A DNA stretch of 64,000 nt, from the IMG/VR virus record IMGVR_UViG_3300028676_000003, positions 248,001 to 312,000 of that record; one strand, written 5' to 3'. The number at the start of each line of letters is the position of its first letter. Position 1 is the first letter of the stretch. This document shows, in pieces, positions 2,286 to 29,640 of this stretch. Made by a program: the position numbers and the translations under genes. A model generated the notes under the pieces. The model was not told the DNA's origin. It did not search any database and saw only the letters and a list, made by a program, of their open reading frames with translations.

Positions 2286-2297
2286 AACAAAGAAATC

Positions 2298-2798: not shown

Positions 2799-3004
2799 TC
2801 AAATATTAGTTGTACATTTGTACTCTAATTTAAAAACAAGTATTATGGCAGGTGAAATAATCGGAGAAATATTAGTTGGTGCAATTGAACTAGCGGCAGA
2901 AATCGCAATAGATGAAAAGAAGCCAGGATGTGGATGCGCAATTATCATTGCCTTGCTATTAATACTAGGTTTTGGAATTTATTACTTTAACTAAAAACAA
3001 AAAT

Positions 3005-4429: not shown

Positions 4430-4611
4430 TGGAAACAATCGGTATCATCATAGGAGTAATAGTAGCTGTTATTCTTGTAGCAGGGTTAATTACCTATGCA
4501 GTAGTAGCTTATAGTATTTGGAAAGTTAAAAAAAGAGCTGAGAAGTTCATATCTGAAAAAGGTGTAGAGACTGCTGTTAAAATAACTCAAAAGTTATTAG
4601 ATAAAAAATAG
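4429..4611 (+). CDS. small membrane protein
   Basis: N-terminal hydrophobic helix and basic tail. Confidence 0.55.
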   Translation: METIGIIIGVIVAVILVAGLITYAVVAYSIWKVKKRAEKFISEKGVETAVKITQKLLDKK

Positions 4612-4661
4612 GATATTAGTTTTAATAATGATACCTTTGTATTCAAATATTAAAACAATAT

Positions 4662-4922
4662 ATGAAGAAATACTTTATCATTGCCTTATCAGCTTTTTGT
4701 TTGGAATTGGTTACTACAATGTACATCAATGGTGTTGCTGACAAAAACACTCTCCAAACACTCTTTTTCGCCTTTGTTAGTCCTTTTATGTCACTACCAT
4801 TTGTAATGTATGTAATTGAAGCTAAAGGCTTAAACGATAGAATAAAAATGGCATTCTGTTCGGGTACTGGTTACGCAATCGGAGTGTTAGTATGTATGAA
4901 TTTTTTAATGAAACACATTTAA
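4662..4922 (+). CDS. small multi-pass membrane protein
   Basis: Three hydrophobic segments; promoter at 4632. Confidence 0.6.
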   Translation: MKKYFIIALSAFCLELVTTMYINGVADKNTLQTLFFAFVSPFMSLPFVMYVIEAKGLNDRIKMAFCSGTGYAIGVLVCMNFLMKHI

Positions 4923-4924
4923 TT

Positions 4925-5173
4925 ATGAAAAAACTATTATTAATATTACTAGCTGTATTAGCTATATCTTGTAACCCTGATATTGAACAGGTAAAAAAGG
5001 TTAAGGTGGGAATATCTACCAATGAATTAAAGTATCTATTGGGTGAACCATTTGATATTGAGGTCCATAATGGATATGAAGAATGGTATTTTATGTACAG
5101 TGTAAATGGTCATAATGATGGTTTTAAGGTTACAGTAGAAAATTCAAAAGTCGCAGATTTTTATAGTTATTAA
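4925..5173 (+). CDS. lipoprotein, SmpA/BamE-like domain
   Basis: MKK + hydrophobic stretch + LAISC lipobox; VKVG.S..E...LLGEP.......EEW.Y pattern. Confidence 0.55.
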   Translation: MKKLLLILLAVLAISCNPDIEQVKKVKVGISTNELKYLLGEPFDIEVHNGYEEWYFMYSVNGHNDGFKVTVENSKVADFYSY

Positions 5174-5192
5174 TCAAAATTCAAAAACAAAT

Positions 5193-5747
5193 ATGAAAAA
5201 ATTAATTTTATTCGCTATCCTATTGGTTAGTTCGTTAACATTCGCTCAAAAGAAACATGCACCACACGGTGTTGCCGTAAAAACAAACACAGCTGAAGCA
5301 ACCGACTCAACTTCAACTGAAAAACCTAAATGGAAAAACTATATTGCCGTTGGAATATCAGTTTCAAGTGGAAACACTTATGATACTAATGAAAATAAGT
5401 ATACATTTAGTGAATCAGCTTATCCAAGTGTTGAATTTGGATTCTCAAAAGGAAATCTTGCCGCTGGTTTAGCAGTAGGACGTGGTTCTTTTAAAGGATT
5501 AGGTGCAAAAGAAGACCAATTAGGTAATTATTACGCTGAAATTAGAATTACACCATCATTTCCGTTAGGAATCATAGATGCGAATGTAGTTTTTGGTGCG
5601 GGTTCATACCTAGTATCATCAAAAGGAACCTTTATTGAGTATGGTTCAGGTATTTCTTATACCGTTGGTAACTATACATATGGTATCGGTTACTCAAATT
5701 GGGATGGGGTAGATTATATCTCTCCAAGCCTTAGTTACAGTTTCTAA
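5193..5747 (+). CDS. secreted/outer-membrane beta-barrel-like protein
   Basis: Bacteroidota-type signal peptide (FAQ), alternating beta strands and a C-terminal Phe (SYSF). Confidence 0.55.
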   Translation: MKKLILFAILLVSSLTFAQKKHAPHGVAVKTNTAEATDSTSTEKPKWKNYIAVGISVSSGNTYDTNENKYTFSESAYPSVEFGFSKGNLAAGLAVGRGSFKGLGAKEDQLGNYYAEIRITPSFPLGIIDANVVFGAGSYLVSSKGTFIEYGSGISYTVGNYTYGIGYSNWDGVDYISPSLSYSF

Positions 5748-5825
5748 GAAACAAAAATATAATAATAACTTTGGTTGGTAGAAATACCATCTGAATGGAG
5801 CAAAGCAAAAAAATTATAAGATTAA

Positions 5826-6872
5826 ATGAAGAAAATGATTAAATTTCCGTCTATCGAGCAGTTTCGTACAATTAACGCAACTATCCTTAGACAATTCAAT
5901 TTCGTCGGTTTAGACGAAACGGGAGAAGCTATCTACGATACAAACCTCCCAAAACCAAAGCTTTGGTTCAAAGGTAGTGTAAAATTACATGGTACAAATG
6001 CCGCTGTTTGTTACAATACCGCAGGTGGTTTATGGGCACAATCACGTGAAAGCATAATCACAGTTGAAAATGATAATGCAGGGTTCGCATTCTTTGTGGA
6101 AAGTAACAAAGACGCATTCAACCAATTATTCCGTAAAATTCAAGACGAAACAAGTGTTAGTTTTGAACATAATACGGTAAGTATCTATGGTGAGTGGTGC
6201 GGTGGAAACATCCAAAAAGGTGTTGCGATTACAAACTTGCCTAAGTCATTTTTCATCTTTGGTGTGAAAATCTCACCAATTCGTACAAAAGAGCAAGAAG
6301 AAGATAACAAAGAAGTATCATTTTGGGTAGAGTCAAACTATTTAGAGGTTCCTGAAAATAGAATCTACAATGTTGACAGTTTCCAAACATATGCTATTGA
6401 AATCGACTTCAATAACCCTCAATTAGTACAAGACAAATTAACTGAATTAACACTTGCTGTAGAAGCAGAGTGTCCGATTGGAAAAGCTTTCGGATTCTCA
6501 GGTGTTGGTGAAGGTATTGTTTGGAAAACGGAATTGGATGGAGAGGTCCATAGATTCAAAGTTAAGGGTGATAAACACTCTAGTTCTAAGAGCGAGAAGA
6601 TTGTTAGTATTGACGTTGAAAAATTGGAATCAATCCAAAAATTCATCGAATATGCTGTAACAGAAAGTCGCTTCAAACAAGGTCTTGAAAATGTATTCCC
6701 AAATGAAGAACCTATCGAAATCAAAAAGATGGGTGAACTTATCAAATGGGTAGTTAATGACGTTATCAAAGAAGAGACCGACACAATGGTAGCTAACAAT
6801 ATCGAACCAAAAGAGGTTAATAAATACATCTCTACAAGGGTACGTGAAATGTTCATGGCACTAAGTGTTTAA
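5826..6872 (+). CDS. RNA ligase, Rnl2 family
   Basis: Motifs KFPSIEQF, VKLHGTNA, IYGEWCG, GEGIVW and FKVKG. Confidence 0.85.
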   Translation: MKKMIKFPSIEQFRTINATILRQFNFVGLDETGEAIYDTNLPKPKLWFKGSVKLHGTNAAVCYNTAGGLWAQSRESIITVENDNAGFAFFVESNKDAFNQLFRKIQDETSVSFEHNTVSIYGEWCGGNIQKGVAITNLPKSFFIFGVKISPIRTKEQEEDNKEVSFWVESNYLEVPENRIYNVDSFQTYAIEIDFNNPQLVQDKLTELTLAVEAECPIGKAFGFSGVGEGIVWKTELDGEVHRFKVKGDKHSSSKSEKIVSIDVEKLESIQKFIEYAVTESRFKQGLENVFPNEEPIEIKKMGELIKWVVNDVIKEETDTMVANNIEPKEVNKYISTRVREMFMALSV

Positions 6873-8997: not shown

Positions 8998-10284
8998 ATG
9001 ATAACAAACGAGAATGGTTTAAGATATGCTAAATTGATGCACGTTTCAGTTGATAACGGTCATACAGATAATAGCAATAAAGTTTATATCATGGAAGAAC
9101 TTTCCAATGGTACAATCAAATGTGAATACGGTAGAGTCGGTAATTCGATGGCCGTAGATATCAAACCCGCAAGCAAATGGGATGCAACCTATAAGCAGAA
9201 AACAAGCAAAACGAAGGGTTACACTGATGTAACTGAGTTTATGGCTGAACCTGTTGTAGATGCCGCTAAACCTTCAGGTAACAACCTGATTGATGATATT
9301 CCTGATGCTCTTGTTAAAGAACTTATTAAACGTTTAAGCGACTTCGCAAACAAATCGATTCAACAAAACTATAAGGTAACTCAAGATGCAGTATCTGAGG
9401 CCCAAGTAGTTGCGGCTCAAGCTTTATTAACTAGAATTACAACAACAGTTGCAGTTGGAGTTAGTAAAAATGACTTGAATGAAATGCTTATGCAATTATA
9501 TACGATAATCCCTCGTAACATGAGAAATGTTAAGGATTATTTGTTAGATGAAATCAAAACTGCCGATGATGTAAATCAAGCATTAGAGTTCTTGAATAAA
9601 GAACAAGCTACTCTTGATACAATGGCTGGTCAAGTTGATTTAATAAAGAAACAGAAGCCTGTAGTTGATACTGAAACCAAAGAAGTGAAACCATCAACAT
9701 ATACTATTCTTGACCAAATGGGTATTACAGCTGAGGTTGTAAATGATGCTCCAACTATCAAGATGGTAAGAGATATGCTTGAAGGACATGGTAGAAAACT
9801 TCACAGAGTCTACGCAATTACCAATAAGAAATCACAACCGCTTTACGATACCAAATTGGATTCAAGCAAAAACAAATTGGTTGAACACTTGTTCCACGGT
9901 TCAAGAAATGCCAATTGGTTTAACATTCTTCAAACTGGTCTTATGATTAGACCTTCGGGAGCTGGTTATAATGGTTCTATGTTTGATGATGGTATCTACT
10001 TCGCTAACGATGCAGATAAATCAATGGGTTACACCGATGGTGGTCGTTGGGCAGGTGGTGGAAACGCAAGTTACACTTACTTAGGTGTATTTAGCGTTCA
10101 CTTAGGAAACCAATTACACGTTCATAGACATGATTCTTCATGTTACAAAATTGGAACCAAGTGTAGAAACGAGGGTTATGATTCGGTTTATGCTCACAAA
10201 GGAGCTTCACTTAGAAAAGATGAGTTAATTATTTATAATTCTGCTCAGTGTACTGTTAAATATTTAGTAGAACTTAAAAATTAA
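8998..10284 (+). CDS. PARP-family ADP-ribosyltransferase (WGR + regulatory + catalytic domains)
   Basis: N-terminal NKVY...EYGRVG...KGY (WGR), LYTIIP (regulatory), then LFHGSR..N...IL..GL, GSMFDDGIYFA....KS.GY and DELIIY (H-Y-E triad). Confidence 0.9.
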   Translation: MITNENGLRYAKLMHVSVDNGHTDNSNKVYIMEELSNGTIKCEYGRVGNSMAVDIKPASKWDATYKQKTSKTKGYTDVTEFMAEPVVDAAKPSGNNLIDDIPDALVKELIKRLSDFANKSIQQNYKVTQDAVSEAQVVAAQALLTRITTTVAVGVSKNDLNEMLMQLYTIIPRNMRNVKDYLLDEIKTADDVNQALEFLNKEQATLDTMAGQVDLIKKQKPVVDTETKEVKPSTYTILDQMGITAEVVNDAPTIKMVRDMLEGHGRKLHRVYAITNKKSQPLYDTKLDSSKNKLVEHLFHGSRNANWFNILQTGLMIRPSGAGYNGSMFDDGIYFANDADKSMGYTDGGRWAGGGNASYTYLGVFSVHLGNQLHVHRHDSSCYKIGTKCRNEGYDSVYAHKGASLRKDELIIYNSAQCTVKYLVELKN

Positions 10285-12297: not shown

Positions 12298-12927
12298 ATG
12301 GAAAATGATATAAATTTTAATTTAATAGTGTTTTATCTTGATAGATATTATGACATTATAAACAACACAATCTATAACAAATTATTTGATAAAGATGAAT
12401 GGGGTTATGAAACGATAGAAGAACTTACACAAGTTCTTAGTATCGATGAAGCCTTAGTTAAAGAAGTTGTTGAATCTTGGGTTTTATCGAAGGGTTTACC
12501 TTTAGATAAATGGGAAAGTGCATATGAACCTAAGATGCTTAAAACTATATTCAACCCTCAAAGAAGACTTGAATTAGAAAGAATTATCGGTAAAAGTGCT
12601 GAGGCTCAGGTAACAGCTATGTTAGCTCAAGCGATAGCTGATGAAATCGATAGTGAAATTCTTAGAATGCTTAAAAAAAAAGTGAAGACAGCGGAATTAT
12701 TATCGGAATTGCTTAAGTGTTTAGGTTATACATTTGGACCAGTATACTATGACCCGATTACCTACGCACAAAACAGGAAGATACTAACATCCACAGAATA
12801 TAGAATGATTCATGAACAACAAAATAACCCTTACTGGCAAGATTGGTTTCGAGCCCGAAGACAAGACGAAGAAACACAAAAATCAAGCCTCTTGGAAGAG
12901 AATGGCGATGATTTACTTAGATGGTGA
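12298..12927 (+). CDS. hypothetical protein containing a T4-gp23 major-capsid-like segment
   Basis: KMLKT.F.P....EL....G.SAEA....ML...IA.EID.EILR resembles the conserved gp23 segment; the rest is unrelated and far too short for a capsid protein. Confidence 0.5.
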   Translation: MENDINFNLIVFYLDRYYDIINNTIYNKLFDKDEWGYETIEELTQVLSIDEALVKEVVESWVLSKGLPLDKWESAYEPKMLKTIFNPQRRLELERIIGKSAEAQVTAMLAQAIADEIDSEILRMLKKKVKTAELLSELLKCLGYTFGPVYYDPITYAQNRKILTSTEYRMIHEQQNNPYWQDWFRARRQDEETQKSSLLEENGDDLLRW

Positions 12928-13333
12928 TATTACAGACTACTATGCTTGGTTTATTAAACAAAGATACGGTATTACTCTAAATAAACCGCTACGTGGTGCT
13001 CATATTTCATTCATTAACGACAGCATAAGAGACTTAACTCTTAATGGTAAAAGAACCCAAGAAGAAGCTGATTGTATTTGGAATAAGGTTAAAAAGAAGT
13101 ATCACGGTAAAAAAATTGAAGTCGTTTTGGACTTAGACCCTAAGACAGACGACAGAACGTGGTGGTTAAACATACCACACGAAGACAGAGCAGATATTCA
13201 AGCAATTAGAGATGAACTTGGCTTAGGTAGACCATTTTTCGGACTACACATGAGCGTAGGTTACGCTAATGAAAGAAATATCGAACAAAGTATGTACATA
13301 CACGAATTAATCAAAAAAGGTTTTATAAAATGA
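12812..13333 (+). CDS. 2H phosphoesterase-like protein
   Basis: Two HxS motifs (GAHISF, GLHMSV) about 80 aa apart. Confidence 0.6.
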   Translation: MNNKITLTGKIGFEPEDKTKKHKNQASWKRMAMIYLDGDITDYYAWFIKQRYGITLNKPLRGAHISFINDSIRDLTLNGKRTQEEADCIWNKVKKKYHGKKIEVVLDLDPKTDDRTWWLNIPHEDRADIQAIRDELGLGRPFFGLHMSVGYANERNIEQSMYIHELIKKGFIK

Positions 13334-14595
13334 AAAAGAAAGTAGTAATTATCGGTGGTGGAACATTTTCACATGTAAGAACTCACTTGGCGTTGGCAAC
13401 TCCTGCTTGGGGTACAACAGCAAGAGCTCTTTATGAGAAATGTCAAGCAAAATTTACGCATATGGATGTTGAGCTTATCCTTACAAAGATGGCTGATTAC
13501 AAATCCGATATCGTAACAAACGAGGATGTTTCTGAATTAATAGATAAACTAATTCAAGACAATACAGTAAAAGCAATCTTCTTCAATGTCGCAATGTGTG
13601 ATTTTGACGGACAAATCGGATTAACTCAATCAGGTAAGTACGAACCAAGGCTTGAATCACGTGAAAAACCAGGTCACGGTTACAAAATTTGGCTACATCC
13701 AGCAGACAAGGTTATCAATAAGATTAGAAAACATCGTAAAGACATTTTCCTTGTTGGTTTCAAAACAACATCAAACGGAACACAAGACGAGCAATTCAAC
13801 AAGGGTCTTAACCTAATGAAGAAAAGTTCAGCAAATCTTGTTCTTGCAAATGACGTTGTAACACGTAAAAACTTTATCATTACTCCCGAAGAAGGTGTTT
13901 ACGGTAAAGATATGACTCGTGATGAGTGTCTTGAGGAGTTGGTTGATATTGCTTATCACAGAACACATTTAAGCTTCACAAACTCTACTGTTATTGCTGG
14001 GAATCCAGTGCCATGGTCTGACGAAAGAGTTCCATCAACACTTAGAAGTGTAGTTGATTGGTGCATCGAAAAGAATGCTTATAAAGAGTTCAATGGAGCA
14101 ACAACAGGTCACTTTGCGGCCAAGTTAGGGGATAACAAATTCCTTACATCTATTCGTAAGACCAACTTCAATGACATTGGAAGCAATGGAATGGTACTGG
14201 TTGAAACAGATGGTGATGATTCAGTTATTGCTTATGGTGTTAAGCCAAGTGTTGGTGGACAATCACAAAGAATTATCTTTGATAAATTCAAAGAAACTGA
14301 TTGTATCGTGCATTTCCACTGTCCATTAAAAGAAAACCATTTAGATAACATTCCAGTCGTTTCTCAAAGAGAATATGAGTGCGGTAGCCACGAGTGTGGT
14401 GAGAATACTGCTAGAGGACTTGGAGTCTTTGGTAATCTTTTATGTGTAATGCTTGATAATCACGGTCCAAATATCGTGTTTAACAATAGCATTGACCCTC
14501 AAGAGGTTATTACCTTTATTGAGAATAACTTCGATTTATCAAGTTCAACATCAGGATTTCAAAAGGTAACTCTAGGAATCCCTCAATTGGTGTAA
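13330..14595 (+). CDS. fusion of a CoaB/phosphopantothenate-cysteine-ligase-like domain and a class II aldolase/adducin-like domain
   Basis: N-term V.I.GGGT, VAMCDF, KVI..IRK....FLVGFK.T, ANLVLAND. C-term GHFA......FLTS, KPS, IVHFH, LDNHG. Confidence 0.75.
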   Translation: MKKKVVIIGGGTFSHVRTHLALATPAWGTTARALYEKCQAKFTHMDVELILTKMADYKSDIVTNEDVSELIDKLIQDNTVKAIFFNVAMCDFDGQIGLTQSGKYEPRLESREKPGHGYKIWLHPADKVINKIRKHRKDIFLVGFKTTSNGTQDEQFNKGLNLMKKSSANLVLANDVVTRKNFIITPEEGVYGKDMTRDECLEELVDIAYHRTHLSFTNSTVIAGNPVPWSDERVPSTLRSVVDWCIEKNAYKEFNGATTGHFAAKLGDNKFLTSIRKTNFNDIGSNGMVLVETDGDDSVIAYGVKPSVGGQSQRIIFDKFKETDCIVHFHCPLKENHLDNIPVVSQREYECGSHECGENTARGLGVFGNLLCVMLDNHGPNIVFNNSIDPQEVITFIENNFDLSSSTSGFQKVTLGIPQLV

Positions 14596-14596
14596 G

Positions 14597-15139
14597 ATGA
14601 TAGATTACAAACTACTAGATGATTCAATCCTTTATTATGAAGCTCACGGCTTTAAAAGGATTGAATCGCCTTGGTTAGTGACTGATGCAGTTGATTCAAT
14701 CACAAGACCACCTAATGTTGAGCCATATGTCGTTGGAGCTAAGAAGAAAAACCTTATAGCTTCAGGAGAACAAGCCTTTTTGTATCTTTATCTTAAAGAA
14801 TACTTACCAATGGGTAAGTTTCAAACAACAACACCTTGTTTCAGAAACGATTCATTCGATTTTACACATACAAAATACTTCATGAAAAATGAACTTATTC
14901 AAACTGATATTACTACAAAAAGTCAGTTGGATGAAGTAGTTGAAATAGCACTTGGGTTCTTCGAGAAACACTTTGATAACTTAAGGATAGAATATACTGG
15001 CGATGGTTACGATATCATGAAAGATAACTACGAGCTTGGAAGCTACGGAATCAGAGAGTGTGAATTCCTTAAATGGATATACGCTACTGGCTGTGCAGAA
15101 CCAAGAACGTCAAAATTAATAAAATTATACAATGGATAA
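14597..15139 (+). CDS. stand-alone class II aminoacyl-tRNA-synthetase-like catalytic domain
   Basis: Motif 1 GFKRIESPW, motif 2 TPCFRND....H..YFMKNEL, ELGSYG and motif 3 ATGCAEPR. No anticodon-binding domain. Confidence 0.75.
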   Translation: MIDYKLLDDSILYYEAHGFKRIESPWLVTDAVDSITRPPNVEPYVVGAKKKNLIASGEQAFLYLYLKEYLPMGKFQTTTPCFRNDSFDFTHTKYFMKNELIQTDITTKSQLDEVVEIALGFFEKHFDNLRIEYTGDGYDIMKDNYELGSYGIRECEFLKWIYATGCAEPRTSKLIKLYNG

Positions 15140-15698
15140 AGCACAATTGCTTGATATCGATTTCCTTAAGGCTAATCATACAAGAATCTATTACTTTGGA
15201 CTTGGATTTATTCAAGTTGTACTAAATCAATACGAACGAGTTCATTTCTATTCGGATGAACTAGCTAAAATTGCTGTAGACGAAGGTTTTCATAACCATC
15301 GATACAATTTCACATCAATAATCCTTAAAGGTGAATTCTTGCAAGGTAGATACCAATTAATTCCAGGAGATTCTCACATTCTTTCTAACGTTAACTGTAG
15401 TAAAGACAAGGAGTTAACCTATGGTAGTGAAATTCCTGTAGGTTTAAAAAGAATTGAACGTTCAGAACGTGACGTAGCTGAAGTCTACTATGAAGGTGAT
15501 ATCTATGACATTATGTATAATGAGTTTCATAAGGTAGCTTCAAGTGGAAATACCATTACTTATTTAAAGCGAAGTGACTATATCATGGAGTTTGCACAAG
15601 TTATTCGTCAAAAAGATAAAGAATTGGTTTGTCCATTTTCAATTAGTTTCACAGAAGATGAGTTATGGGCCAAGATTGAAGAAATAATCAAAAATTAA
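15132..15698 (+). CDS. cupin-fold protein
   Basis: HNHRYNFTS.IL.G ... FHKV cupin metal motifs. Confidence 0.65.
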   Translation: MDKAQLLDIDFLKANHTRIYYFGLGFIQVVLNQYERVHFYSDELAKIAVDEGFHNHRYNFTSIILKGEFLQGRYQLIPGDSHILSNVNCSKDKELTYGSEIPVGLKRIERSERDVAEVYYEGDIYDIMYNEFHKVASSGNTITYLKRSDYIMEFAQVIRQKDKELVCPFSISFTEDELWAKIEEIIKN

Positions 15699-15699
15699 G

Positions 15700-15942
15700 A
15701 TGGGATATCACACAAGAGACATAGAAAAGGGTGTTTTAGGACAATTTTCTAAGATTAAAGAAGAATTTCAAGAAGCTGAAGATGCTTTCATTCAAAATGA
15801 TGATATTCTTATGATTGTTGAATTGGCTGATATGGTTGGAGCAATTGAAGAATATGTGAAAAAATGGAACTTGGATTTACTAAGCTTGAAACAGTTCTCA
15901 GACAAGACAAAATCGGCTTTTAGAGACGGAACAAGAAAATAA
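15700..15942 (+). CDS. MazG-like nucleotide pyrophosphohydrolase
   Basis: KI.EE..E..DA........ELAD..GAI. Confidence 0.7.
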   Translation: MGYHTRDIEKGVLGQFSKIKEEFQEAEDAFIQNDDILMIVELADMVGAIEEYVKKWNLDLLSLKQFSDKTKSAFRDGTRK

Positions 15943-17484: not shown

Positions 17485-18412
17485 AGACATATTGTTTGGA
17501 CTTGCTGTTGGAGACGCTTTAGGTGTTCCAGTTGAGTTTCTATCAAGAGAAGAAATTGCAAGTAATCCAGTAACTGACATGCGTGAGTTCGGAACACACC
17601 ACCAACCCAAGGGAACTTGGTCTGATGATGCTTCACTAGCGTTTTGCTTGGCTGAATCACTTACCAAGGGTTATGATATCCAAGACATTGCGAATAACTT
17701 CGTTAAATGGAAGTATGCAAACCTATGGACTGCAAGAGATGTTGTATTTGATATCGGAATTGCTACAAGTGCCGCAATTGACAGAGTTTATCGAAAAACA
17801 AATCCTATTGAATGCGGTGGTGCTGATATTTCATCAAATGGTAATGGTTCTTTAATGAGAATCCTACCACTTTTGCCTGAATTAAAAAATCTAAGTATTG
17901 AAGATTCATTCAAAAAGGTAAGTGATGTTTCGTCTATTACACATAGACACCCAATTTCACTTATTTCATGTTTTTATTACATGGAATATGCTAATTTTTT
18001 AGCAACAGGAAATGATAGATTTGAATCATATCATTTGTTACGAAGACACTTCAGAACAATGGCCGAAGGAATGGGATTTGATGAAGAAACGATAAATAAA
18101 TTGAGCCGTTTGACTGATGAAAATATATTTGACATTCCAATGGACAAGATTCATAGTAGTGGATATGTGATTCATAGTCTTGAAGCAAGCATTTATAATA
18201 TTTTAACAACAAATTCTTATTCAGAAGCTGTTTTACAAGCCGTGAATATGGGTCAAGATACAGATACAACGGCCGCTATTACTGGTGGACTTGCTGGAAT
18301 GATATATGGATTTGATTCAATCCCAAAAGAATGGATAAATGAATTGGCTAGAAAAGAGGATATCTTGGACTTGGCCGATAGATACGAAAAAAAATTAAAA
18401 GAAAATGAGTAA
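17468..18412 (+). CDS. ADP-ribosylglycohydrolase (DraG/ARH family)
   Basis: GLAVGDALGVPVEF, GTWSDD, GNGSLMRI.P, SSITH and N.G.DTDTTAAITGGLAG. Confidence 0.95.
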   Translation: MKHIIKDILFGLAVGDALGVPVEFLSREEIASNPVTDMREFGTHHQPKGTWSDDASLAFCLAESLTKGYDIQDIANNFVKWKYANLWTARDVVFDIGIATSAAIDRVYRKTNPIECGGADISSNGNGSLMRILPLLPELKNLSIEDSFKKVSDVSSITHRHPISLISCFYYMEYANFLATGNDRFESYHLLRRHFRTMAEGMGFDEETINKLSRLTDENIFDIPMDKIHSSGYVIHSLEASIYNILTTNSYSEAVLQAVNMGQDTDTTAAITGGLAGMIYGFDSIPKEWINELARKEDILDLADRYEKKLKENE

Positions 18413-19637
18413 ACAAATCACACACGAATTCCTAGTAGAGAATGGACTGATATTATTCGAAACCATTATTGGTTCACAAGCATACGGTACTCAAACACCT
18501 GCAAGTGATATTGATAAGAAATTCGTGTATATCCTTCCTGAAGACTACATCTTAGGAACTGGTTATGTTGAACAAATCAACGTAAACAAAGATTACACAG
18601 GATGGGAGATTAGGCGTTTCTTATAACTTATGGGTTCAAACAATCCAACAGTACTAGAGCTTTTAAATAGCCCTGCTGACTGTATTATCTCAAAGCATCC
18701 TCTTTTTGACCTTATTCTTGAAAATAAAGACAAGTTTATCACCAAAATCTGTAAAGATTCGTTTGGTGGTTATGCAAGACAACAAATCAAGAAAGCAAAG
18801 GGCCTAAACAAGAAACAAAATTGGGAACACGATAAGGTAGTGAGAAAAGACCTATTAGATTTCTGTTATGTTATTGAAGGAGATAAATCAATTCCTTGGA
18901 GAAAATGGAACAACGGAAAATATGATGAAAAATTCATTGGTGCCGTAAATCTTCCAAACGCAAGAGACGTTTATGCTTTACACTACGATACAGTTGGTGA
19001 ATTGACTCATTCTGAGATTCATCCTGTTAAAGACAGAGAATACAGAAAAATTATTCTTAAAGAAGCTGGTAAACCAATGGGATTAGGATATAAAGGACTT
19101 ATCAACACTGGACAAGAAGACTCAGAAGGTAAGATTAACTATGGTATTTCAAACCAATTACGTCTATCTAGTATTCCAAAAGATGAAAAGGTTATTTGTA
19201 ACATAGTTTACAACAAAGATGGTTATTCAGAACACTGTAAAGATTTCAAAGAGTATGAAGAATGGTTGGAAAATCGTAATGAAGCTCGTTATGTTGAAAC
19301 ACAAGAACACGGTCAAAGAATTGATGGTAAGAATATGATGCATTGTATGCGACTTATCAAAATGTCTCAAGAAATCGGAGAAGGTAAAGGTATCATCGTT
19401 AGAAGACCTGATGCTCAAGAACTTCTTAAAATTAGACGTGGTGAGGTTGATTTAGAAACACTTATTGCGCTTGCCGATGAAGAGATTGAAAAGATGGATA
19501 AAATCTTTGATAATTCAAACCTTCCATCAAGCGTTGACAAGAAACTTGTTAACCAACTATTAATAAAAATCCGTAAAGGGTTCTATAAAAAAGAAAAAAA
19601 ATCATGGATATCTACTCTGCTCCAAAAGATACGATAA
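18405..19637 (+). pseudogene. DNA-pol-beta-superfamily nucleotidyltransferase (RlaP/YcgL-like) interrupted by an in-frame TAA at 18624-18626
   Basis: GSQAYG..TP.SD.D lies in the first ORF and continues in the same frame as WEIRRFL*LMGSNNP.VLELL; C-term DGKNMMHC.RL. Confidence 0.75.
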
Positions 19638-20158
19638 GAACAAATTCAGGGTTATTCATCAACGTGTTTGAGACTGACCCTGATACTATCATAATCGAAG
19701 ATGTTGCTCACGCACTAGCACACATGCCAAGATTTGGTGCTCACTTGGATGAATTTTATTCAGTTGCGCAACATAGCGTATATTGCTTTAATCTTGCAAT
19801 AATGCATGGACTTGAATACGGCCTAGCCGCTCTTCTTCACGATGCAAGTGAAGCATATATTCTAGATATGCCAACACCAATCAAGAGACACTTACCTGAT
19901 TATCAGGCGGTGGAACACAAGTTGATGATGGCTATTGCAAAGAAATTTGGTTTCGAGTTTCCATTGAATCCTGTTATTAAAGAAGTTGATAAAGAAGCAT
20001 TGGATTATGAGTATAAGAATATGGTAAACGAAGATACTAAGGGTCTTGACCCTAATTTCGTTATCATGACACCAAAAGAGGCTAAAGCTGAATTCCTAGC
20101 AATGTTTCAATTGATTCAAAAATATCTTGCAAAACAAGAGGTACACGAGGTTGATTAA
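19604..20158 (+). CDS. HD-domain 5'-deoxynucleotidase (YfbR-like)
   Basis: I.DVAHALA..PRF.AH...FYSVAQHS ... LLHDASEAY..D.PTP.K. Confidence 0.85.
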   Translation: MDIYSAPKDTIRTNSGLFINVFETDPDTIIIEDVAHALAHMPRFGAHLDEFYSVAQHSVYCFNLAIMHGLEYGLAALLHDASEAYILDMPTPIKRHLPDYQAVEHKLMMAIAKKFGFEFPLNPVIKEVDKEALDYEYKNMVNEDTKGLDPNFVIMTPKEAKAEFLAMFQLIQKYLAKQEVHEVD

Positions 20159-20789: not shown

Positions 20790-20872
20790 GCCGTGGTACC
20801 AAAGTGGTTGAATGGGGTGGTCTGCAAAACCATTAGCGAAAGCTCTCGTCGGTTCGAATCCGACCCACGGTT
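20790..20872 (+). tRNA. tRNA-Cys(GCA) with a long variable arm
   Basis: Cloverleaf, loop CTGCAAA, variable hairpin AGCGAAAGCT, T-loop TTCGAAT. Confidence 0.85.
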
Positions 20873-20886
20873 CAAAAAAGAGTATT

Positions 20887-21261
20887 ATGAATGAAATAGA
20901 AATCAAAAAAGACTTATATAAGTCTAAAGCAATGGCTAAATTTAGTCATTACAAAGCTGGTGAATTGTTTTACAATGTTGAACTGATAGACGGAATATAT
21001 CAATTCCCAATCTCAACAGTAGAAGATAAAGAAACTGAAGTGCTTTACGAAGTTAAGGTTGTTTCAAATAACATAGATGGTGAAAAGGCTTCTAAACAAG
21101 CAGAGCCTATCAAGATTATTGTTAATGAGAAACAATTATCAGAAGACTTAGGAGAAACTGAATTTGCTAATGAAATTAAGGGTTCTGAGTTGATTAGATG
21201 GATATTCAAAGCTATCAAGGCTGAAAAGATAAGAAAAATTGGTACCAAGCCAGTTCGTTAA
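20887..21261 (+). CDS. hypothetical protein
   Basis: Start reassigned to ATG 20887 because the track start lies inside tRNA-Cys. Confidence 0.6.
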   Translation: MNEIEIKKDLYKSKAMAKFSHYKAGELFYNVELIDGIYQFPISTVEDKETEVLYEVKVVSNNIDGEKASKQAEPIKIIVNEKQLSEDLGETEFANEIKGSELIRWIFKAIKAEKIRKIGTKPVR

Positions 21262-21315
21262 AACGGAGAAATAATTGGGTATCAAGGATAAAATAGGTAA
21301 CTCAGGTTACCATTT

Positions 21316-21387
21316 GGGAGTGTAGCTCAGAGGAAGAGCGGTTGTGTTACATACAACAGGTCGGGATTTCAAAATTCCCCGTTCCCA
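21316..21387 (+). tRNA. tRNA-Val(TAC)
   Basis: Stem GTTGT/ACAAC, loop GTTACAT. Confidence 0.85.
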
Positions 21388-21565
21388 CAAAAATAACGTA
21401 AACTAAAAAATACTGAATATGGATTTTAATTGTGTATATTGCAAAAAGTCTCACGGGGTTATGACAATAGTTGACGGAAATATGGTTCATCTATCCTGCT
21501 TGAAAGATTATATTGCTGAAAATGAGTATGATAGTGAAGTAGAAGAAATTCTTGAAGAATAAATC

Positions 21566-21639
21566 GTCGAGGTGGTGAAATTGGTAAACACGGTAAGTTC
21601 AAACCTTACATGCTGAGGGTTCGAGTCCCTTCTTCGATA
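21566..21639 (+). tRNA. tRNA-Leu(CAA), short variable loop
   Basis: GTAAG-TTCAAAC-CTTAC, Leu-type D arm, variable region only ATGCT. Confidence 0.85.
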
Positions 21640-21748
21640 CTGTTCTTGCACAAAGTGTAAGGGACTTGGGTGGGTGACTAGAGTCAATATGTTCACTGCA
21701 ATCGCAATCCCTAAAGTTGCGCTCCCCATCTACGGGATGGGGTATTTT

Positions 21749-21822
21749 GGCCCTGTAGCCCAATTGGTAGAGGCATCAGATTTAAATCCTGTATAGTGTG
21801 GGTTCGAATCCCATCGGGGCTA
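21749..21822 (+). tRNA. tRNA-Leu(TAA), short variable loop, weak anticodon stem
   Basis: TCAGA-TTTAAAT-CCTGT, canonical T arm. Confidence 0.7.
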
Positions 21823-21879
21823 CTACATCTCCCTAGGGAGAAGGTGCTGGTTGATGAGCTGACCTTATAGCTCATATTT

Positions 21880-21959
21880 GTCGGGGTGATGAAATTGGTA
21901 GACATGAGGTCCTTAAACGGCCTTGCTTAAGCATACGGGTTCGAGTCCCGTTCCCGATA
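21880..21959 (+). tRNA. tRNA-Leu(TAA)
   Basis: AGGTC-CTTAAAC-GGCCT, variable arm TGCTTAAGCA. Confidence 0.9.
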
Positions 21960-21974
21960 CTAAAAAGAAATAAA

Positions 21975-22190
21975 ATGGGAAAAATATTAGAAATAACAGA
22001 AAAGGTACCACAGGTTGCAAAGCTTCCTGATGGAGTTTACAACGGAACTTGGGGTGGTTATGTAATTGAACTTGTTTATCAAGGTAAAACATTTCAACTT
22101 AAAACAGAAGAAGGTGTCAGAGGTATGGGATTCAAGGTAGTTGTATTTGTAAAGGACGGAGTAGCAACCTATGAAGAAATAAATAACTAA
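21975..22190 (+). CDS. hypothetical protein
   Basis: ORF between tRNAs. Confidence 0.6.
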   Translation: MGKILEITEKVPQVAKLPDGVYNGTWGGYVIELVYQGKTFQLKTEEGVRGMGFKVVVFVKDGVATYEEINN

Positions 22191-22196
22191 AATAAT

Positions 22197-22270
22197 GCAC
22201 GTGTAGCCCAATTGGAAGAGGCGATGGTCTTAGAAGCCATACAGTGTGGGTTCGAATCCCATCATGTGTA
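22197..22270 (+). tRNA. tRNA-Leu(TAG), short variable loop
   Basis: ATGGT-CTTAGAA-GCCAT. Confidence 0.85.
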
Positions 22271-22539
22271 CAAAAACAAAGAAAATGGGAATATTAAAAA
22301 TTCATAATGCAGGATTAACAGGGTATTATTTGGAGCAAACTCTTGGTGGTAAACCTCTTATAGATTCAGGACTTATAATTAGTCAAGAAGACGATGATTC
22401 AGATGAACCATCAACAATTGAGCTTCATTATACTGATGAAAAGGACCTAGAAGCTAAGGTATCAATAATTATTGAAATGTTAACTGATAAATAATAGGAA
22501 ATGTCATTTATTTGTTATACCTTTGTAAAAAATTAAGCT

Positions 22540-22950
22540 ATGGATAATGTAATACTACTAGATTTAGACGGAGTTCTGATAACAACGAAGCCTTGGGAAT
22601 CAGATGTAATTATTGAAGACGGATTTGCCCAATTCAACGAAAAATCAGTTGCAAAGCTAAACGAATACTTGGAATCAACAGGCTACGATATAGTATTAAC
22701 TTCATCAAGACGTTATACGACTGAAATAGACCAAATGAACGAGTTTTTCAAGGCAAGAGGTATCAAAGGACAGATAATTCAATATCTTCCGTTATATGAC
22801 CTAGATTTGCGTTATTCAAGATATGATGAGGTAATGAGATTCATTATGAAGCATAGGCCTGAGAATTATTTGGTAATTGATGATGATAAGTCTCTTGCGA
22901 AGTTAGGTAACAACAAATGGATTAAAACTGACCCAATGATTGGTTTATGA
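22540..22950 (+). CDS. HAD-family phosphatase (HAD_SAK-like)
   Basis: LLDLDGVL, IVLTSSRR, R..E, YLVIDDD, TDP..GL. Confidence 0.8.
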   Translation: MDNVILLDLDGVLITTKPWESDVIIEDGFAQFNEKSVAKLNEYLESTGYDIVLTSSRRYTTEIDQMNEFFKARGIKGQIIQYLPLYDLDLRYSRYDEVMRFIMKHRPENYLVIDDDKSLAKLGNNKWIKTDPMIGL

Positions 22951-23183
22951 TAAGATATTTTTGCGATAACAAAAGACATATTGTATGTTTACCTTATTCC
23001 GTTGAAAATCTTCATAAGATGGCTGAGGACTTGGGTTTAAACAGAAGATGGTTTCATAAAGGGAAAAATAACAATTCTCATTATGATATGCCGATAAAAG
23101 AAATAGCAGTTATTACTGCAAAGTGTGAATTAGTAACCAGTGAAGAAATAGTTGATATTATACGTGGAAGATTTACAAAATAA
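22947..23183 (+). CDS. DUF4031-like protein
   Basis: LH.MA..LGL.RRWFH.......HYD.P. Confidence 0.6.
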   Translation: MIRYFCDNKRHIVCLPYSVENLHKMAEDLGLNRRWFHKGKNNNSHYDMPIKEIAVITAKCELVTSEEIVDIIRGRFTK

Positions 23184-23348
23184 GTTAGAAATACTAAATA
23201 GCAATTATTGGGAACATTTCAAGTTTGCTAAGGACTTGGCAGGGTTTTTAGCCCATGACCATCCTAGAAGACGAAGAATAGAAGAGAAGTTAAACGAAAT
23301 GGTTGATGAAATTCAAGAATTGAATCGACTATTACAAAATAAAAACAA

Positions 23349-23424
23349 GGGAGTATAGCTCAGTTGGTTCAGCAGCGTCTCGTTTACACCGAGAAGGTCG
23401 GGGGTTCGAATCCCTCTACTCCTA
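23349..23424 (+). tRNA. tRNA-Val(TAC)
   Basis: TCTCG-TTTACAC-CGAGA. Confidence 0.9.
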
Positions 23425-23428
23425 CTAA

Positions 23429-23507
23429 AAGATAGTTTCAGCAAGCAAACGGTTAAAAATTTGTCTCATAAACAAACTGAGTGGTTCAATCCCACAAAAC
23501 TATCTTG
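23429..23507 (+). ncRNA. CAGCAA-stem element (skipping-rope-like) enclosing a Met(CAT) anticodon arm and a T arm
   Basis: AAGATAGTT.CAGCAA ... TTTGT-CTCATAA-ACAAA, GTGG-TTCAATC-CCAC ... AACTATCTT-G. Confidence 0.6.
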
Positions 23508-23512
23508 AATTT

Positions 23513-23595
23513 GGCCGAGTGGTGGAATTGGTAGACACGCTAGTTTAAGAAGCTAGTGCTGTAATGGCATGCGGGTTCGAGTCCCGCCTTGGTCA
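23513..23595 (+). tRNA. tRNA-Leu(AAG), A34
   Basis: CTAGT-TTAAGAA-GCTAG, Leu D arm, long variable arm. Confidence 0.85.
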
Positions 23596-23617
23596 CAAAC
23601 GTTTTAAATAAATTATT

Positions 23618-24886: not shown

Positions 24887-24892
24887 AATAAT

Positions 24893-25747: not shown

Positions 25748-25785
25748 GTAGCTTCATTTTTATATGTTATTGGATATTTATTAGT

Positions 25786-26130
25786 ATGGAAACAAAATCA
25801 CTAATAAAAAAACTACTACATGAAAATCTTTTAAAAGAGGAATTCAATTATGAAATAGAACACCTAGATAGCTACAATGGACAAGATAATTACGAATTGG
25901 GGTTATATCAAGACGGTGAAATCATTGGACTTGTTCAATATACAATTTATAACGATATCTTAAAGGTTAGCGATATTCTTGTTAGACCTGAATATCGTAG
26001 GCAAGGAATGGGTTCAAGAATGATGCAATACATTAAAACCAAGCATCCAACAGCTAAATATGAACCATCAATGATGACTGATTTAGGAGCCCAATTTAAA
26101 CATAAGGAAATACAAGATTTAAATAAATAA
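25786..26130 (+). CDS. GNAT-family acetyltransferase
   Basis: I.VRPEYRRQGMGS motif A. Confidence 0.75.
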   Translation: METKSLIKKLLHENLLKEEFNYEIEHLDSYNGQDNYELGLYQDGEIIGLVQYTIYNDILKVSDILVRPEYRRQGMGSRMMQYIKTKHPTAKYEPSMMTDLGAQFKHKEIQDLNK

Positions 26131-27433: not shown

Positions 27434-27434
27434 A

Positions 27435-29614: not shown

Positions 29615-29640
29615 GTTAAGTAATATTAACAATACAATCA

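What the first reader, a model, noticed from the sequence alone, without database searches (positions are those of the whole stretch)
12812..15942. Unexplained enzyme operon: 2H phosphoesterase, CoaB-aldolase fusion, aaRS-II core, cupin, MazG
These five genes are tightly coupled (overlaps or 1-nt gaps). Two encode carboxylate-activating amide ligases (CoaB-like and class II aaRS-like), alongside a metal aldolase/dehydratase domain, a cupin and a nucleotide pyrophosphatase. The set looks like a pathway for an aminoacylated or modified nucleotide, a tRNA/DNA modification or a signal-molecule antagonist. I cannot assign it to a known pathway.
Basis: partly seen in the sequence, partly recalled or inferred. 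Interest (0 to 1): 0.7.

Follow-up and report, generated by a model that had tools for sequence, protein, structure and literature searches.

The report
Phage SerRS-like/MazG pair, not five-gene pathway
The five tightly packed jumbo-phage genes are real, but only three of them (a stripped-down seryl-tRNA-synthetase-like enzyme, a MazG-like pyrophosphatase and sometimes a cupin) travel together across phages and are often fused, which marks an uncharacterised enzyme module rather than a five-step pathway.

Summary
They are not one conserved operon.

In 74 independent viral loci carrying a homologue of gene C (minimal class II, SerRS-like core):
- Gene E (MazG-like) is present in 74/74 and adjacent in 73/74.
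- Cupin D is present in 2/74, 2H phosphoesterase A in 11/74, and the CoaB-aldolase fusion B in 0/74.

C-E also occurs as a single polypeptide (12 of the best 149 E-family representatives). D-E occurs fused in both orders. D, E and C sit together in three different gene orders.

B is an autonomous enzyme. It stands alone in 8 viral and 80 cellular loci (CPR bacteria, Bdellovibrionales, Polyangiaceae). A tracks the RNA-repair nucleotidyltransferase RlaP (22/70 loci).

Tight spacing is the norm in this window. The five genes lie inside an 18-gene block (PARP to HD) within an RNA-repair/NAD-ADP-ribose island, next to about 40 tRNA genes.

Best reading: a composite block whose real unit is C+E(+D), an undescribed aaRS-paralogue module. 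It probably makes an aminoacyl-nucleotide-type product; that chemistry is inferred, not shown.

The parts
12812..13333 (+). A: putative 2H phosphoesterase (phrog_12204). It belongs to the RNA-repair gene set and is not part of the conserved module.
   Evidence: Two invariant HxS motifs (H64, H146) in a 22-sequence alignment. 6 of 22 homologues hit PF22547 2H-SAK, best E 2e-4. Atlas feature neighbours are 2H-SAK, tRNA_lig_CPD and Acb1. RlaP lies within 7 kb in 22 of 70 A loci, C-E in 6 of 70.
13330..14595 (+). B: fusion of a CoaB-like nucleotide-binding ligase domain (aa 1-215) and a class II aldolase-like metal domain (aa 230-405). An autonomous enzyme and a mobile cassette.
   Evidence: Pfam DFP plus Aldolase_II above cutoffs. 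Fold Z 21.6 to 2gk4 and 11.7 to 1pvt. More than 3500 full-length homologues. It stands alone in 8 viral and 80 cellular loci. In the related 376-kb phage it sits about 10 kb upstream of the A..C-E stretch, between HD_4 and DNA ligase.
14597..15139 (+). C: minimal class II aaRS catalytic core, SerRS-derived, with no tRNA-binding domain (phrog_4806).
   Evidence: Model pLDDT 94. VIA Z 19.4 to mt-SerRS over all 180 residues. Best PDB sequence hit is SerRS 2dq3, E 1e-4, with motif 2 aligned. Invariant R83, H91, F95, K97, E99, E146, S149, T164 and R170.
15132..15698 (+). D: metal-binding cupin-like protein (phrog_4784), an optional third member of the module.
   Evidence: Invariant H38, H54, H56, H133, C89 and C167. 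Weak likeness to cysteine dioxygenase and PCO_ADO. D-E fusions occur in both orders. D is adjacent to C and E in 11 of 24 D loci, in three different orders.
15700..15942 (+). E: MazG/HisE-like all-alpha NTP pyrophosphohydrolase domain (phrog_6408), the obligate partner of C.
   Evidence: EExxE..D and ExxD carboxylates are invariant in 149 representatives. E is adjacent to C in 73 of 74 loci. 12 C-E fusion proteins were found among the best 149 family representatives.
737..6872 (+). Context: RNA and DNA end-joining genes. Rnl1-type RNA ligase 737-1861, HD_4 2298-2798, ATP-dependent DNA ligase 2972-4429, Rnl2-type RNA ligase 5826-6872.
   Evidence: Pfam hits above cutoffs.
8998..10284 (+). Context: PARP-family ADP-ribosyltransferase, the first gene of the 18-gene block. 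A terminator-like hairpin lies upstream at 8857-8881.
   Evidence: PF00644, E 1.9e-20. Hairpin.
18405..20158 (+). Context: RlaP-family RNA 3'-end nucleotidyltransferase, split by an in-frame TAA at 18624-18626, followed by an HD-domain protein (19604-20158). A terminator-like hairpin lies at 20745-20773.
   Evidence: Homology to the 407-aa PF10127 gene of L017 and to the UPEC06 nucleotidyltransferase. HD hit. Hairpin.
20790..54525 (+). Context: an array of about 40 tRNA genes directly downstream of the block.
   Evidence: ARAGORN finds 40 genes; Rfam finds 37 tRNA hits.

Best explanation
The five genes are a lineage-specific juxtaposition of three independent things. They sit inside a long co-directional block of a 369-kb jumbo phage's RNA-repair / NAD-ADP-ribose / tRNA island.

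(1) C+E, with D as an optional third member, is a real and evolutionarily conserved enzyme module.
- C is a SerRS-derived class II core. It keeps every ATP-, Mg- and amino-acid-binding residue but has lost the tRNA-binding arm.
- E is a catalytically intact MazG-like NTP pyrophosphohydrolase. It is nearly always encoded next to C and is often fused to its C-terminus.
- D is a His-metal cupin that is often fused to E.
- Proposed mechanism (inferred, not shown): C adenylates serine or a similar small amino acid. Lacking a tRNA-recognition domain, it passes the amino acid to a nucleotide-type acceptor (an NMP, or a terminal-adenosine-like 2'/3'-OH).
- E produces or presents that acceptor by cutting an NTP to NMP + PPi. 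The precedent is phage MazZ feeding dGMP to PurZ.
- D then tailors the product oxidatively.
- The genomic company (RlaP, CCA-adding enzyme, RNA ligases, 2H, tRNA arrays) suggests the product or target belongs to tRNA/RNA-end maintenance or counter-defence.

(2) A is a 2H phosphoesterase of the RNA-repair set. It would process cyclic-phosphate ends or, like Acb1, cleave cyclic nucleotides.

(3) B is a self-sufficient two-domain enzyme: a CoaB-like NTP-dependent ligase domain plus a Zn/Fe class II aldolase-like sugar-phosphate domain. It works without A, C, D or E, including in cellular genomes.
For: Shown:
- C-E linkage: 74/74 loci have E, 73/74 adjacent on the same strand, across 29-72% identity. 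In the annotated phage collection all 12 accessions visible in both tables have C and E 500 bp or less apart, spanning Caulobacter, Brevundimonas, Erwinia, Escherichia, Klebsiella and Acinetobacter phages.
- Fusions: 12 C-E single-polypeptide fusions are the only large partner class among E-domain fusions.
- D-E fusions occur in both orders (Phab24 id036, P0314, P0342, P0353, P0356, P0359, P0373, P0399).
- D, E and C are adjacent in the orders C-D-E, D-E-C and E-D-C.
- All 17 phage records with D come from groups that also carry C and E.
- Catalytic residues are intact in C and in E.
- C covers only the catalytic core of SerRS, T. thermophilus residues 161-396.
- B independence.
- B has moved within the island: between HD_4 and DNA ligase in the 376-kb relative, between A and C here.
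- A-RlaP association: 22/70 loci.
- tRNA-end repair context: in rV5-like UPEC06 the order is CCA-adding enzyme ... RlaP - x - [E fusion] - C. RlaP lies 1-3 kb from D-E-C in L252, L255 and L266. RlaP adds 1-2 nt to damaged RNA 3' ends (bioRxiv 10.64898/2025.12.29.696909).

Inferred: the amino acid, the acceptor, the order of steps and the biological role.
Against: - No biochemical datum exists for any member, and I found no paper on the module.
- The RNA-repair context is not universal. RlaP lies within 7 kb in only 2 of 74 C loci, and in Acinetobacter T4-like phages the pair sits among nrd genes.
- E is also fused to many unrelated small domains and stands alone in 53 of 149 representatives. 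One E locus (L278) has no C within 3 kb.
- The serine assignment rests on a motif 2 alignment plus residue spacing recalled from SerRS structures. It is not a pocket analysis.
- D's dioxygenase likeness is weak (E 0.008; Atlas 0.77-0.79; TM 0.44-0.50).
- A sits directly upstream of C in 11 of 74 loci, and B lies 5 kb from D-E-C in one distant locus (L267). Weak functional ties of A or B to the module are therefore not excluded.
- Full A-B-C-D-E synteny does persist among close relatives (L019).
Confidence: 0.6

Rival explanations
1. One reading: all five genes form one pathway, with two carboxylate-activating ligases, an aldolase, a cupin and a pyrophosphatase, that builds an aminoacylated or modified nucleotide.
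For: The genes are contiguous and co-directional. Full synteny is kept in a relative at 77-83% identity (L019). One distant locus has B 5 kb from D-E-C (L267). A thematic link is imaginable, because phosphopantetheine chemistry connects three of the genes: CoaB-like B, aa:carrier-protein-ligase-like C and thiol-dioxygenase-like D.
Against: B is absent from 74 of 74 other C loci. A, C, D and E are absent from 88 of 88 other B loci. Only 1 of 5 complete C-E phages has B, 220 kb away. Pseudomonas Otagovirus phages carry the B N-terminal domain (28 Pseudomonas phage records), while Pseudomonas is not among the common hosts of C-bearing phages. B is common in cellular genomes that lack the others. 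No carrier-protein gene was found nearby. Tight spacing is generic here.
Confidence: 0.06
2. C is a genuine minimal seryl- (or other aminoacyl-) tRNA synthetase. It recharges phage-encoded or repaired tRNAs, and E acts as a helper, for example by cleaning the NTP pool or processing tRNA 3' ends.
For: The active site is SerRS-like and intact. The neighbours are CCA-adding enzyme, RlaP, RNA ligases and about 40 tRNA genes. The RlaP paper shows that repaired tRNAs must be re-aminoacylated.
Against: C has no coiled-coil arm or anticodon-binding domain; it covers the core only. From prior knowledge (recalled, not checked here), SerRS without its N-terminal arm activates serine but barely charges tRNA. 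The obligate fusion with a nucleotide pyrophosphatase and a cupin is not explained by tRNA charging.
Confidence: 0.17
3. C-E makes or turns over dinucleoside polyphosphates (Ap4A/Ap4N) or installs Ap4-type 5' caps on RNA, as LysU does. E binds or hydrolyses the polyphosphate nucleotide.
For: Class II synthetases form Ap4A from the aminoacyl-adenylate, and LysU caps RNA 5' ends (review PMC9437257). A tRNA-less core would favour this side reaction. E is a nucleotide-polyphosphate hydrolase by motif.
Against: There is no direct evidence. Synthesis and hydrolysis on one polypeptide would be futile unless regulated. The cupin partner is unexplained.
Confidence: 0.1
4. C aminoacylates a protein, as PoxA/EpmA does for EF-P or aa:carrier-protein ligases do. 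The cupin would act as a hydroxylase, by analogy to EpmC.
For: There is precedent for core-only class II paralogues that modify proteins, followed by a hydroxylase step (PMC9437257). C lacks tRNA-binding domains.
Against: No conserved target or carrier gene is adjacent. The invariant partner is a nucleotide hydrolase, not a protein-binding module. D is present in only a minority of loci.
Confidence: 0.05

Closest known systems
Seryl-tRNA synthetase (bacterial type, class IIa)
   Same: C shares the catalytic fold (Z 18-19 over all 180 residues). It has a motif 2 of the form TPCFR..(R/H)xxxFxKxE, the ExxS Mg site and a motif 3 Arg.
   Different: C has no N-terminal coiled-coil tRNA arm and a shortened motif 2 loop, and is only 180 aa. 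It is always paired or fused with a MazG-like domain.
Core-only aaRS paralogues: aa:carrier-protein ligases, PoxA/EpmA, HisZ, AsnA (review PMC9437257)
   Same: These are class II cores that lost tRNA-binding domains and transfer an activated amino acid to a non-tRNA acceptor. In the case of HisZ the core acts as a regulator.
   Different: No carrier protein, EF-P-type target or HisG is linked here. The partner is a nucleotide pyrophosphohydrolase. The catalytic residues are retained, unlike in HisZ.
MazG/HisE/dimeric-dUTPase all-alpha NTP pyrophosphohydrolases, including phage MazZ of the PurZ Z-genome cluster
   Same: E has the EExxE...ExxD metal motif and a short all-helical domain. MazZ is a precedent for a phage MazG that supplies an NMP to a ligase.
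   Different: E scores below Pfam cutoffs. It has extra invariant GYH, K18, Q32 and R79. It is fused to aaRS-like or cupin domains, and its substrate is unknown.
Phosphopantothenoylcysteine synthetase CoaB
   Same: The N-terminal domain of B has the fold (Z 21.6), a GGT nucleotide loop and the (A)ND motif, and passes the Pfam DFP cutoff.
   Different: B scores far below the equivalog cutoffs (36 bits against 265). The 'ITNxSxG' segment that carries the catalytic Asn is replaced by 'LAAPAFG' in the alignment to 2gk4. There is no CoaC. B is fused to a class II aldolase-like domain.
Class II aldolase/adducin family (FucA, AraD, MtnB)
   Same: The C-terminal domain of B has the fold (Z 11.7) and an invariant HxH...H metal triad (H328, H330, H378).
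   Different: The PS(S)E phosphate/general-base segment reads PSVGGQSQ, with no Glu. There is an extra invariant ECGSHxCG insertion. Some organisms fuse the B module to a methyltransferase.
2H phosphoesterases of RNA repair (2H-SAK, tRNA ligase CPDase) and Acb1
   Same: A has two HxS motifs, is of similar size, and is associated with RlaP and RNA ligases.
   Different: The window protein itself has no significant Pfam or PDB sequence hit, and its substrate is unknown.

Membership tests
Seryl-tRNA synthetase / canonical class II aaRS (for C) | Class II catalytic fold with motifs 2 and 3 (fRxE, terminal Arg) | tested here: met
   Fold Z 19.4 to SerRS, rmsd 2.4 over 180 residues. R83, D/E85 and R170 are invariant. 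Motif 2 is aligned to SerRS 2dq3.
Seryl-tRNA synthetase / canonical class II aaRS (for C) | tRNA-binding domain (N-terminal coiled-coil arm or anticodon-binding domain) | tested here: not met
   The 180-aa protein aligns only to the catalytic core, T. thermophilus SerRS residues 161-396. The family length is a constant 179-193 aa.
Seryl-tRNA synthetase / canonical class II aaRS (for C) | tRNA aminoacylation activity | not testable with these tools
   Needs a charging assay.
Amino acid:carrier-protein ligases (for C) | Linked carrier protein with a phosphopantetheine arm | tested here: not met
   No PP-binding/ACP family was found among the neighbours scanned. The invariant neighbour is E.
MazG / all-alpha NTP pyrophosphohydrolase (for E) | EExxE(x)nExxD metal-binding carboxylates | tested here: met
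   E21, E22, E25, E41 and D44 are present in 149 of 149 representatives and D28 in 145 of 149.
MazG / all-alpha NTP pyrophosphohydrolase (for E) | Pfam family score above the gathering cutoff | tested here: not met
   PRA-PH scores 15.2 bits against 21.3. MazG hits appear only in homologues, at 15-17 bits against 22.
MazG / all-alpha NTP pyrophosphohydrolase (for E) | Four-helix-bundle fold and NTP alpha-beta hydrolysis | not tested
Activity needs an assay.
CoaB phosphopantothenoylcysteine synthetase (for B, N-terminal domain) | CoaB fold and Pfam DFP | tested here: met
   Z 21.6 to 2gk4. DFP scores 29.4 bits against 22.
CoaB phosphopantothenoylcysteine synthetase (for B, N-terminal domain) | Orthologue-level score and the conserved Asn-containing motif used in the cysteine-ligation half-reaction | tested here: not met
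   NCBIfam equivalogs score 24-36 bits against cutoffs of 217-265. 'SITNHSTG' of 2gk4 aligns to 'LAAPAFG'. The role of the Asn is from prior knowledge.
Class II aldolase/adducin (for B, C-terminal domain) | Fold plus His metal triad | tested here: met
   Z 11.7 to 1pvt and 11.6 to FucA 2fk5. H328, H330 and H378 are invariant. Their assignment as metal ligands is by motif position.
Class II aldolase/adducin (for B, C-terminal domain) | Catalytic Glu after the PS(S) phosphate loop | tested here: inconclusive
   The invariant segment reads PSVGGQSQR, with no Glu. Equivalence to FucA E73 is judged from the motif only.
2H phosphoesterase (for A) | Two HxT/S motifs | tested here: met
   H64-I-S and H146-M-S are present, with both His invariant in 22 sequences.
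2H phosphoesterase (for A) | Significant profile or fold match | tested here: inconclusive
   The window protein has no Pfam hit. 6 of 22 homologues hit 2H-SAK at best E 2e-4. The PDB profile search was empty. Atlas features score 0.93-0.94 to 2H clusters.
Cupin / thiol dioxygenase (CDO, ADO) (for D) | HxH...H metal site in a double-stranded beta-helix | tested here: inconclusive
   H54, H56 and H133 (plus H38) are invariant. Atlas structural neighbours include Cupin_2 at TM 0.44-0.50. There is no Pfam or PDB sequence hit.
Cupin / thiol dioxygenase (CDO, ADO) (for D) | Family-level sequence match to CDO_I or PCO_ADO | tested here: not met
   Only phrog_4786 at E 0.0084 and Atlas feature scores of 0.77-0.79, which the tool rates as leads only.

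The most novel reading that the evidence does not exclude
The C-E(-D) module is a widespread phage counter-defence or takeover enzyme. It is found in rV5-like, phi92-like, Acinetobacter T4-like, phiCbK-like and many jumbo phages. In this reading it uses a tRNA-independent SerRS core to aminoacylate a nucleotide or an RNA end, for example making a seryl-nucleotide or protecting or marking tRNA 3' ends or RNA 5' ends. That would be a new class of aminoacyl-nucleotide chemistry in virus-host conflict.
Probability: 0.25. Interest if true: 0.85.

Novelty: new variant of a known kind. Interest (0 to 1): 0.6.

Why it matters
Databases label gene C 'histidyl/seryl tRNA synthetase' and gene E 'hypothetical' or 'MazG-like'. 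These labels hide an obligate, often fused two-enzyme unit present in hundreds of cultured phages, including laboratory-tractable E. coli, Acinetobacter and Caulobacter phages.

Core-only aaRS paralogues have repeatedly turned out to perform new chemistry: EF-P lysylation, carrier-protein aminoacylation, Ap4A formation and RNA capping. A phage version welded to a nucleotide pyrophosphatase would add a new reaction type. It would also point to a new layer of tRNA- or nucleotide-centred conflict.

The result shows as well that tight gene spacing in jumbo phages is not evidence of a pathway.

Separately, the CoaB-aldolase fusion B is a large orphan enzyme family with more than 3500 members. It is shared by phages, CPR bacteria and predatory bacteria, and deserves its own study.

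Tried and rejected
- Complex prediction of C with E gave no verdict (score 0.00). This is neither evidence for nor against binding.
- Profile searches of D and A against PDB sequences found nothing.
- HisZ/HisE idea (PHROG name 'histidyl tRNA synthetase' plus the PRA-PH-like hit of E): rejected. C is closest to SerRS by sequence and fold, keeps its catalytic residues, and no HisG is linked.
- Phosphopantetheine theme (CoaB-like B, aa:CP-ligase-like C, thiol-dioxygenase-like D): rejected as a pathway. B does not co-occur with the others and no carrier protein is present.
- Neighbourhoods of B in 80 cellular loci gave only a weak TrmB-like divergent regulator (31 loci), an M23 peptidase (8 loci) and a MaoC-like gene (5 loci). 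None indicates a pathway.
- The extra domains fused to E in PhT2 gp220 and UPEC06 are not D-like. The 176-aa gene that replaces D in L017 is not D-like.
- Pfam found nothing in ten long E-fusion proteins.
- Literature searches found no description of the module. The two comparative-genomics papers checked (PMC7824862, PMC9503650) mention MazG in rV5-type RNA-repair neighbourhoods, but not the aaRS-like partner, CoaB or aldolase.
- An alternative genetic code was considered for the in-frame TAA in RlaP. I did not adopt it, because nothing else in the window suggests recoding.

Full report
**What is there.** The window is bases 248001-312000 of a 368,549-bp virus record. It is AT-rich (GC 0.32-0.41), and almost every gene lies on the + strand. 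The five ORFs of the finding are real:
- A, 12812-13333
- B, 13330-14595
- C, 14597-15139
- D, 15132-15698
- E, 15700-15942

Their junctions are -4, +1, -8 and +1 nt. Such spacing is not special here. In the window 41 of 90 gene junctions are 5 nt or less. The five genes sit inside an unbroken run of 18 genes (8998-20158) flanked by the two strongest terminator-like hairpins of the region, at 8857-8881 and 20745-20773.

**What each protein is.**

*B.* It passes the Pfam cutoffs for DFP/CoaB (residues 2-180) and Aldolase_II (residues 251-332). Its AlphaFold model (pLDDT 88) has a CoaB-fold domain (residues 1-215, Z 21.6 to 2gk4) and a class II aldolase-fold domain (residues 230-405, Z 11.7 to 1pvt and 11.6 to FucA). 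It is not a CoaB orthologue. NCBIfam equivalogs score 24-36 bits against cutoffs above 217. The Asn-bearing CoaB motif is replaced in the alignment to 2gk4. The aldolase-like domain keeps an invariant HxH...H triad, lacks the usual Glu after the PS loop, and has an invariant ECGSHxCG insertion.

*C.* The model (pLDDT 94) is a complete class II aaRS catalytic core and nothing else. All 180 residues superpose on SerRS (Z 19.4), HisRS and PylRS cores. The matched region corresponds to T. thermophilus SerRS residues 161-396. By sequence profile the best solved relative is SerRS 2dq3 (E 1e-4). The alignment matches TPCFR..HxxxFxKxE of C to TPCYRRE..RQHQFDKVE of SerRS.

Residues invariant across 45 sequences, down to 31% identity, are P25, S56, E58, R83, H91, F95, K97, E99, E146, S149, T164 and R170. 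From what I recall of SerRS structures, these fall where the ATP, Mg and serine ligands lie: motif 2 Arg, (R/H)xxxF, the Glu four residues on, ExxS, and Thr six residues before the motif 3 Arg. That mapping is inference and was not computed here.

*E.* It is below the Pfam cutoffs (PRA-PH 15.2 bits). The MazG carboxylates E21, E22, E25, E41 and D44 are present in all 149 of the best family representatives, and D28 in 145 of them. GYH, K18, Q32 and R79 are also conserved.

*D.* It has no Pfam or PDB sequence relatives. It has invariant H38, H54, H56, H133, C89 and C167. Its likeness to cupins and thiol dioxygenases is only weak.

*A.* It has two invariant HxS motifs. Six of 22 homologues give weak hits to PF22547 2H-SAK. 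Atlas feature neighbours are 2H-SAK, tRNA-ligase CPDase and Acb1.

I centred censuses on each gene in IMG/VR, with 7-kb flanks and the window's own contig excluded.

| Centred on | Loci | A | B | C and/or E | D | RlaP |
|---|---|---|---|---|---|---|
| C | 74 (29-72% identity) | 11 | 0 | E 74 (73 within 600 bp, same strand) | 2 | 2 |
| A | 70 | - | 0 | 6 (order A-C-E) | 0 | 22 |
| B | 8 viral + 80 cellular | 0 | - | 0 | 0 | 0 |
| D | 24 | 0 | 1 (5 kb away, L267) | 11 (D adjacent to both C and E) | - | 3 |

Further points:
- The 11 D loci with adjacent C and E show three different gene orders: C-D-E, D-E-C and E-D-C.
- At least five of the other 13 D loci carry C elsewhere on the same contig.
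- Of five complete 420-600-kb phages with C-E, only one has B, 220 kb away.
- In the annotated phage collection C occurs in 276 records and E in 211, with matching host distributions. All 12 accessions visible in both tables have the two genes 500 bp or less apart.
- D occurs in 17 records, all from C/E-bearing groups. B or its N-terminal domain occurs in 40 records, 28 of them Pseudomonas phages, a group in which C is rare.

**Fusions.** A search with an E profile over 1.8 billion representatives gave 954 families. Among the best 149, 12 are C-E single polypeptides with C at the N-terminus. This is the only sizeable fusion class. Three are D/E fusions. The rest are standalone (53) or carry diverse small extensions. 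The D alignment adds five D-E fusions, and Acinetobacter phage Phab24 has E-D followed directly by C. Gene fusion plus permuted but preserved adjacency is strong evidence that C, E and, where present, D act together. Complex prediction gave no verdict.

**History of the block.** A close relative (L019, 77-83% identity) has the same A-B-C-D-E order. A 376-kb relative (about 71% identity for C) has PARP ... g239 - A - [Nuc_deoxyribosyltransferase-like] - [176 aa] - C - E ... RlaP. Its B lies about 10 kb upstream, between an HD_4 gene and a DNA ligase. In the window those two genes are neighbours with no B between them. B is therefore a cassette that moved within the island, and D was inserted between C and E in this lineage.

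**B elsewhere.** Full-length B homologues (43-61% identity) are on chromosomes-sized contigs of CPR bacteria, including a 1.19-Mb Saccharimonadia chromosome. They also occur in Bdellovibrionales, Polyangiaceae, Alphaproteobacteria and others. They are usually next to a divergently transcribed, weakly TrmB-like regulator or an M23 peptidase. AlphaFold DB clusters show the same two-domain module fused to methyltransferase domains, for example in an 1118-aa protein. B is thus a self-contained enzyme of unknown substrate.

**Context.**
- Upstream lie an Rnl1-type RNA ligase, HD_4, a DNA ligase, an Rnl2-type RNA ligase and PARP.
- Downstream lie an ADP-ribosylglycohydrolase homologue (assigned by synteny with L019), RlaP and an HD protein. 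About 40 tRNA genes follow.
- In rV5-like UPEC06 the pair follows a CCA-adding enzyme and RlaP.
- RlaP adds 1-2 nucleotides to damaged RNA 3' ends (bioRxiv 10.64898/2025.12.29.696909).
- An earlier comparative-genomics paper noted a MazG in rV5-type RNA-repair neighbourhoods but not its aaRS-like partner (PMC9503650).
- This context is suggestive but not universal. RlaP lies within 7 kb in only 2 of 74 C loci.

**Mechanism.**

Shown:
- C and E are both catalytically intact by motif.
- They are obligately linked and often fused.
- C lacks any tRNA-recognition domain.

Inferred:
- C adenylates serine or a similar small amino acid and passes it to a nucleotide-type acceptor.
- E generates or presents that acceptor by NTP to NMP + PPi cleavage. 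Fused enzymes usually catalyse consecutive steps, and phage MazZ feeding PurZ is a precedent.
- D oxidatively tailors the product.

Rivals are tRNA charging by a minimal synthetase, Ap4N or cap formation, and protein aminoacylation. They are listed with the tests that would separate them.

**Comparison and novelty.** C-E belongs to the known kind 'core-only aaRS paralogue with a non-translational acceptor' (aa:CP ligases, PoxA, AsnA; PMC9437257). It differs in its invariant MazG-like partner or fusion and in being restricted to phages. I found no description of it in the searchable literature. I rate it a new variant of a known kind. The five-gene pathway as proposed is not supported.

Noticed in passing
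window 18405-19637: The RlaP-family nucleotidyltransferase is interrupted by an in-frame TAA at 18624-18626, where the 376-kb relative has GAA (a single-base difference). This leaves a 73-aa N-terminal piece carrying the NTase motif and a 335-aa C-terminal piece with its own ATG two codons later. It could be a nonsense mutation, an assembly error or a genuinely split gene.
   Followed up: partly
window 20790-54525: There are about 40 tRNA genes in arrays, with many duplicates (Leu x7, Gln x6). Unusual predictions include an 86-nt tRNA with a four-base anticodon call 'agga' (33534-33619). Three tRNAs have A34 anticodons: His-atg, Gly-acc and Leu-aag. Two have undetermined anticodons (39024-39095, 50254-50327).
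   Followed up: no
loci L020-L099; AlphaFold DB entries D2VZL8 and A0A5R9NZ68: The CoaB-aldolase fusion family (B) is widespread in CPR bacteria, Bdellovibrionales, Polyangiaceae and Alphaproteobacteria. These are largely episymbiotic or predatory lineages. Elsewhere the module is fused to methyltransferase domains. It is a large orphan enzyme family shared by phages and such cells.
   Followed up: partly
window 15983-16459: A phage-encoded protein with a signal-peptide-like N-terminus and a weak outer-membrane beta-barrel hit (PF13505, E 6.6e-5, below cutoff) lies directly after the five genes.
   Followed up: no
window 12265-12927 versus 12812-13333: A's ORF overlaps the upstream ORF by 116 nt, and the ESM Atlas holds A only from its residue 31. 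The first 30 residues are conserved in the 376-kb relative (72.7% identity over residues 1-172), which favours the long form of A and a shorter upstream gene.
   Followed up: partly
window 8998-10284, 17468-18412 and 2298-2798: A PARP-family ADP-ribosyltransferase (428 aa), an ADP-ribosylglycohydrolase homologue and an HD_4 (small-alarmone-hydrolase-like) gene flank the region. The related phage adds NADAR, Nudix and a polynucleotide-kinase-like gene. Together they form a dense NAD/ADP-ribose and RNA-repair island.
   Followed up: partly
L016 2857-3480 (Acinetobacter phage PhT2 gp220) and L015 2987-3490 (UPEC06): The E domain is fused to other unknown domains that are not related to the cupin D: a 125-aa C-terminal domain in Acinetobacter T4-like phages and an 84-aa N-terminal domain in rV5-like phages. 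The third component of the module therefore varies between phage groups.
   Followed up: partly
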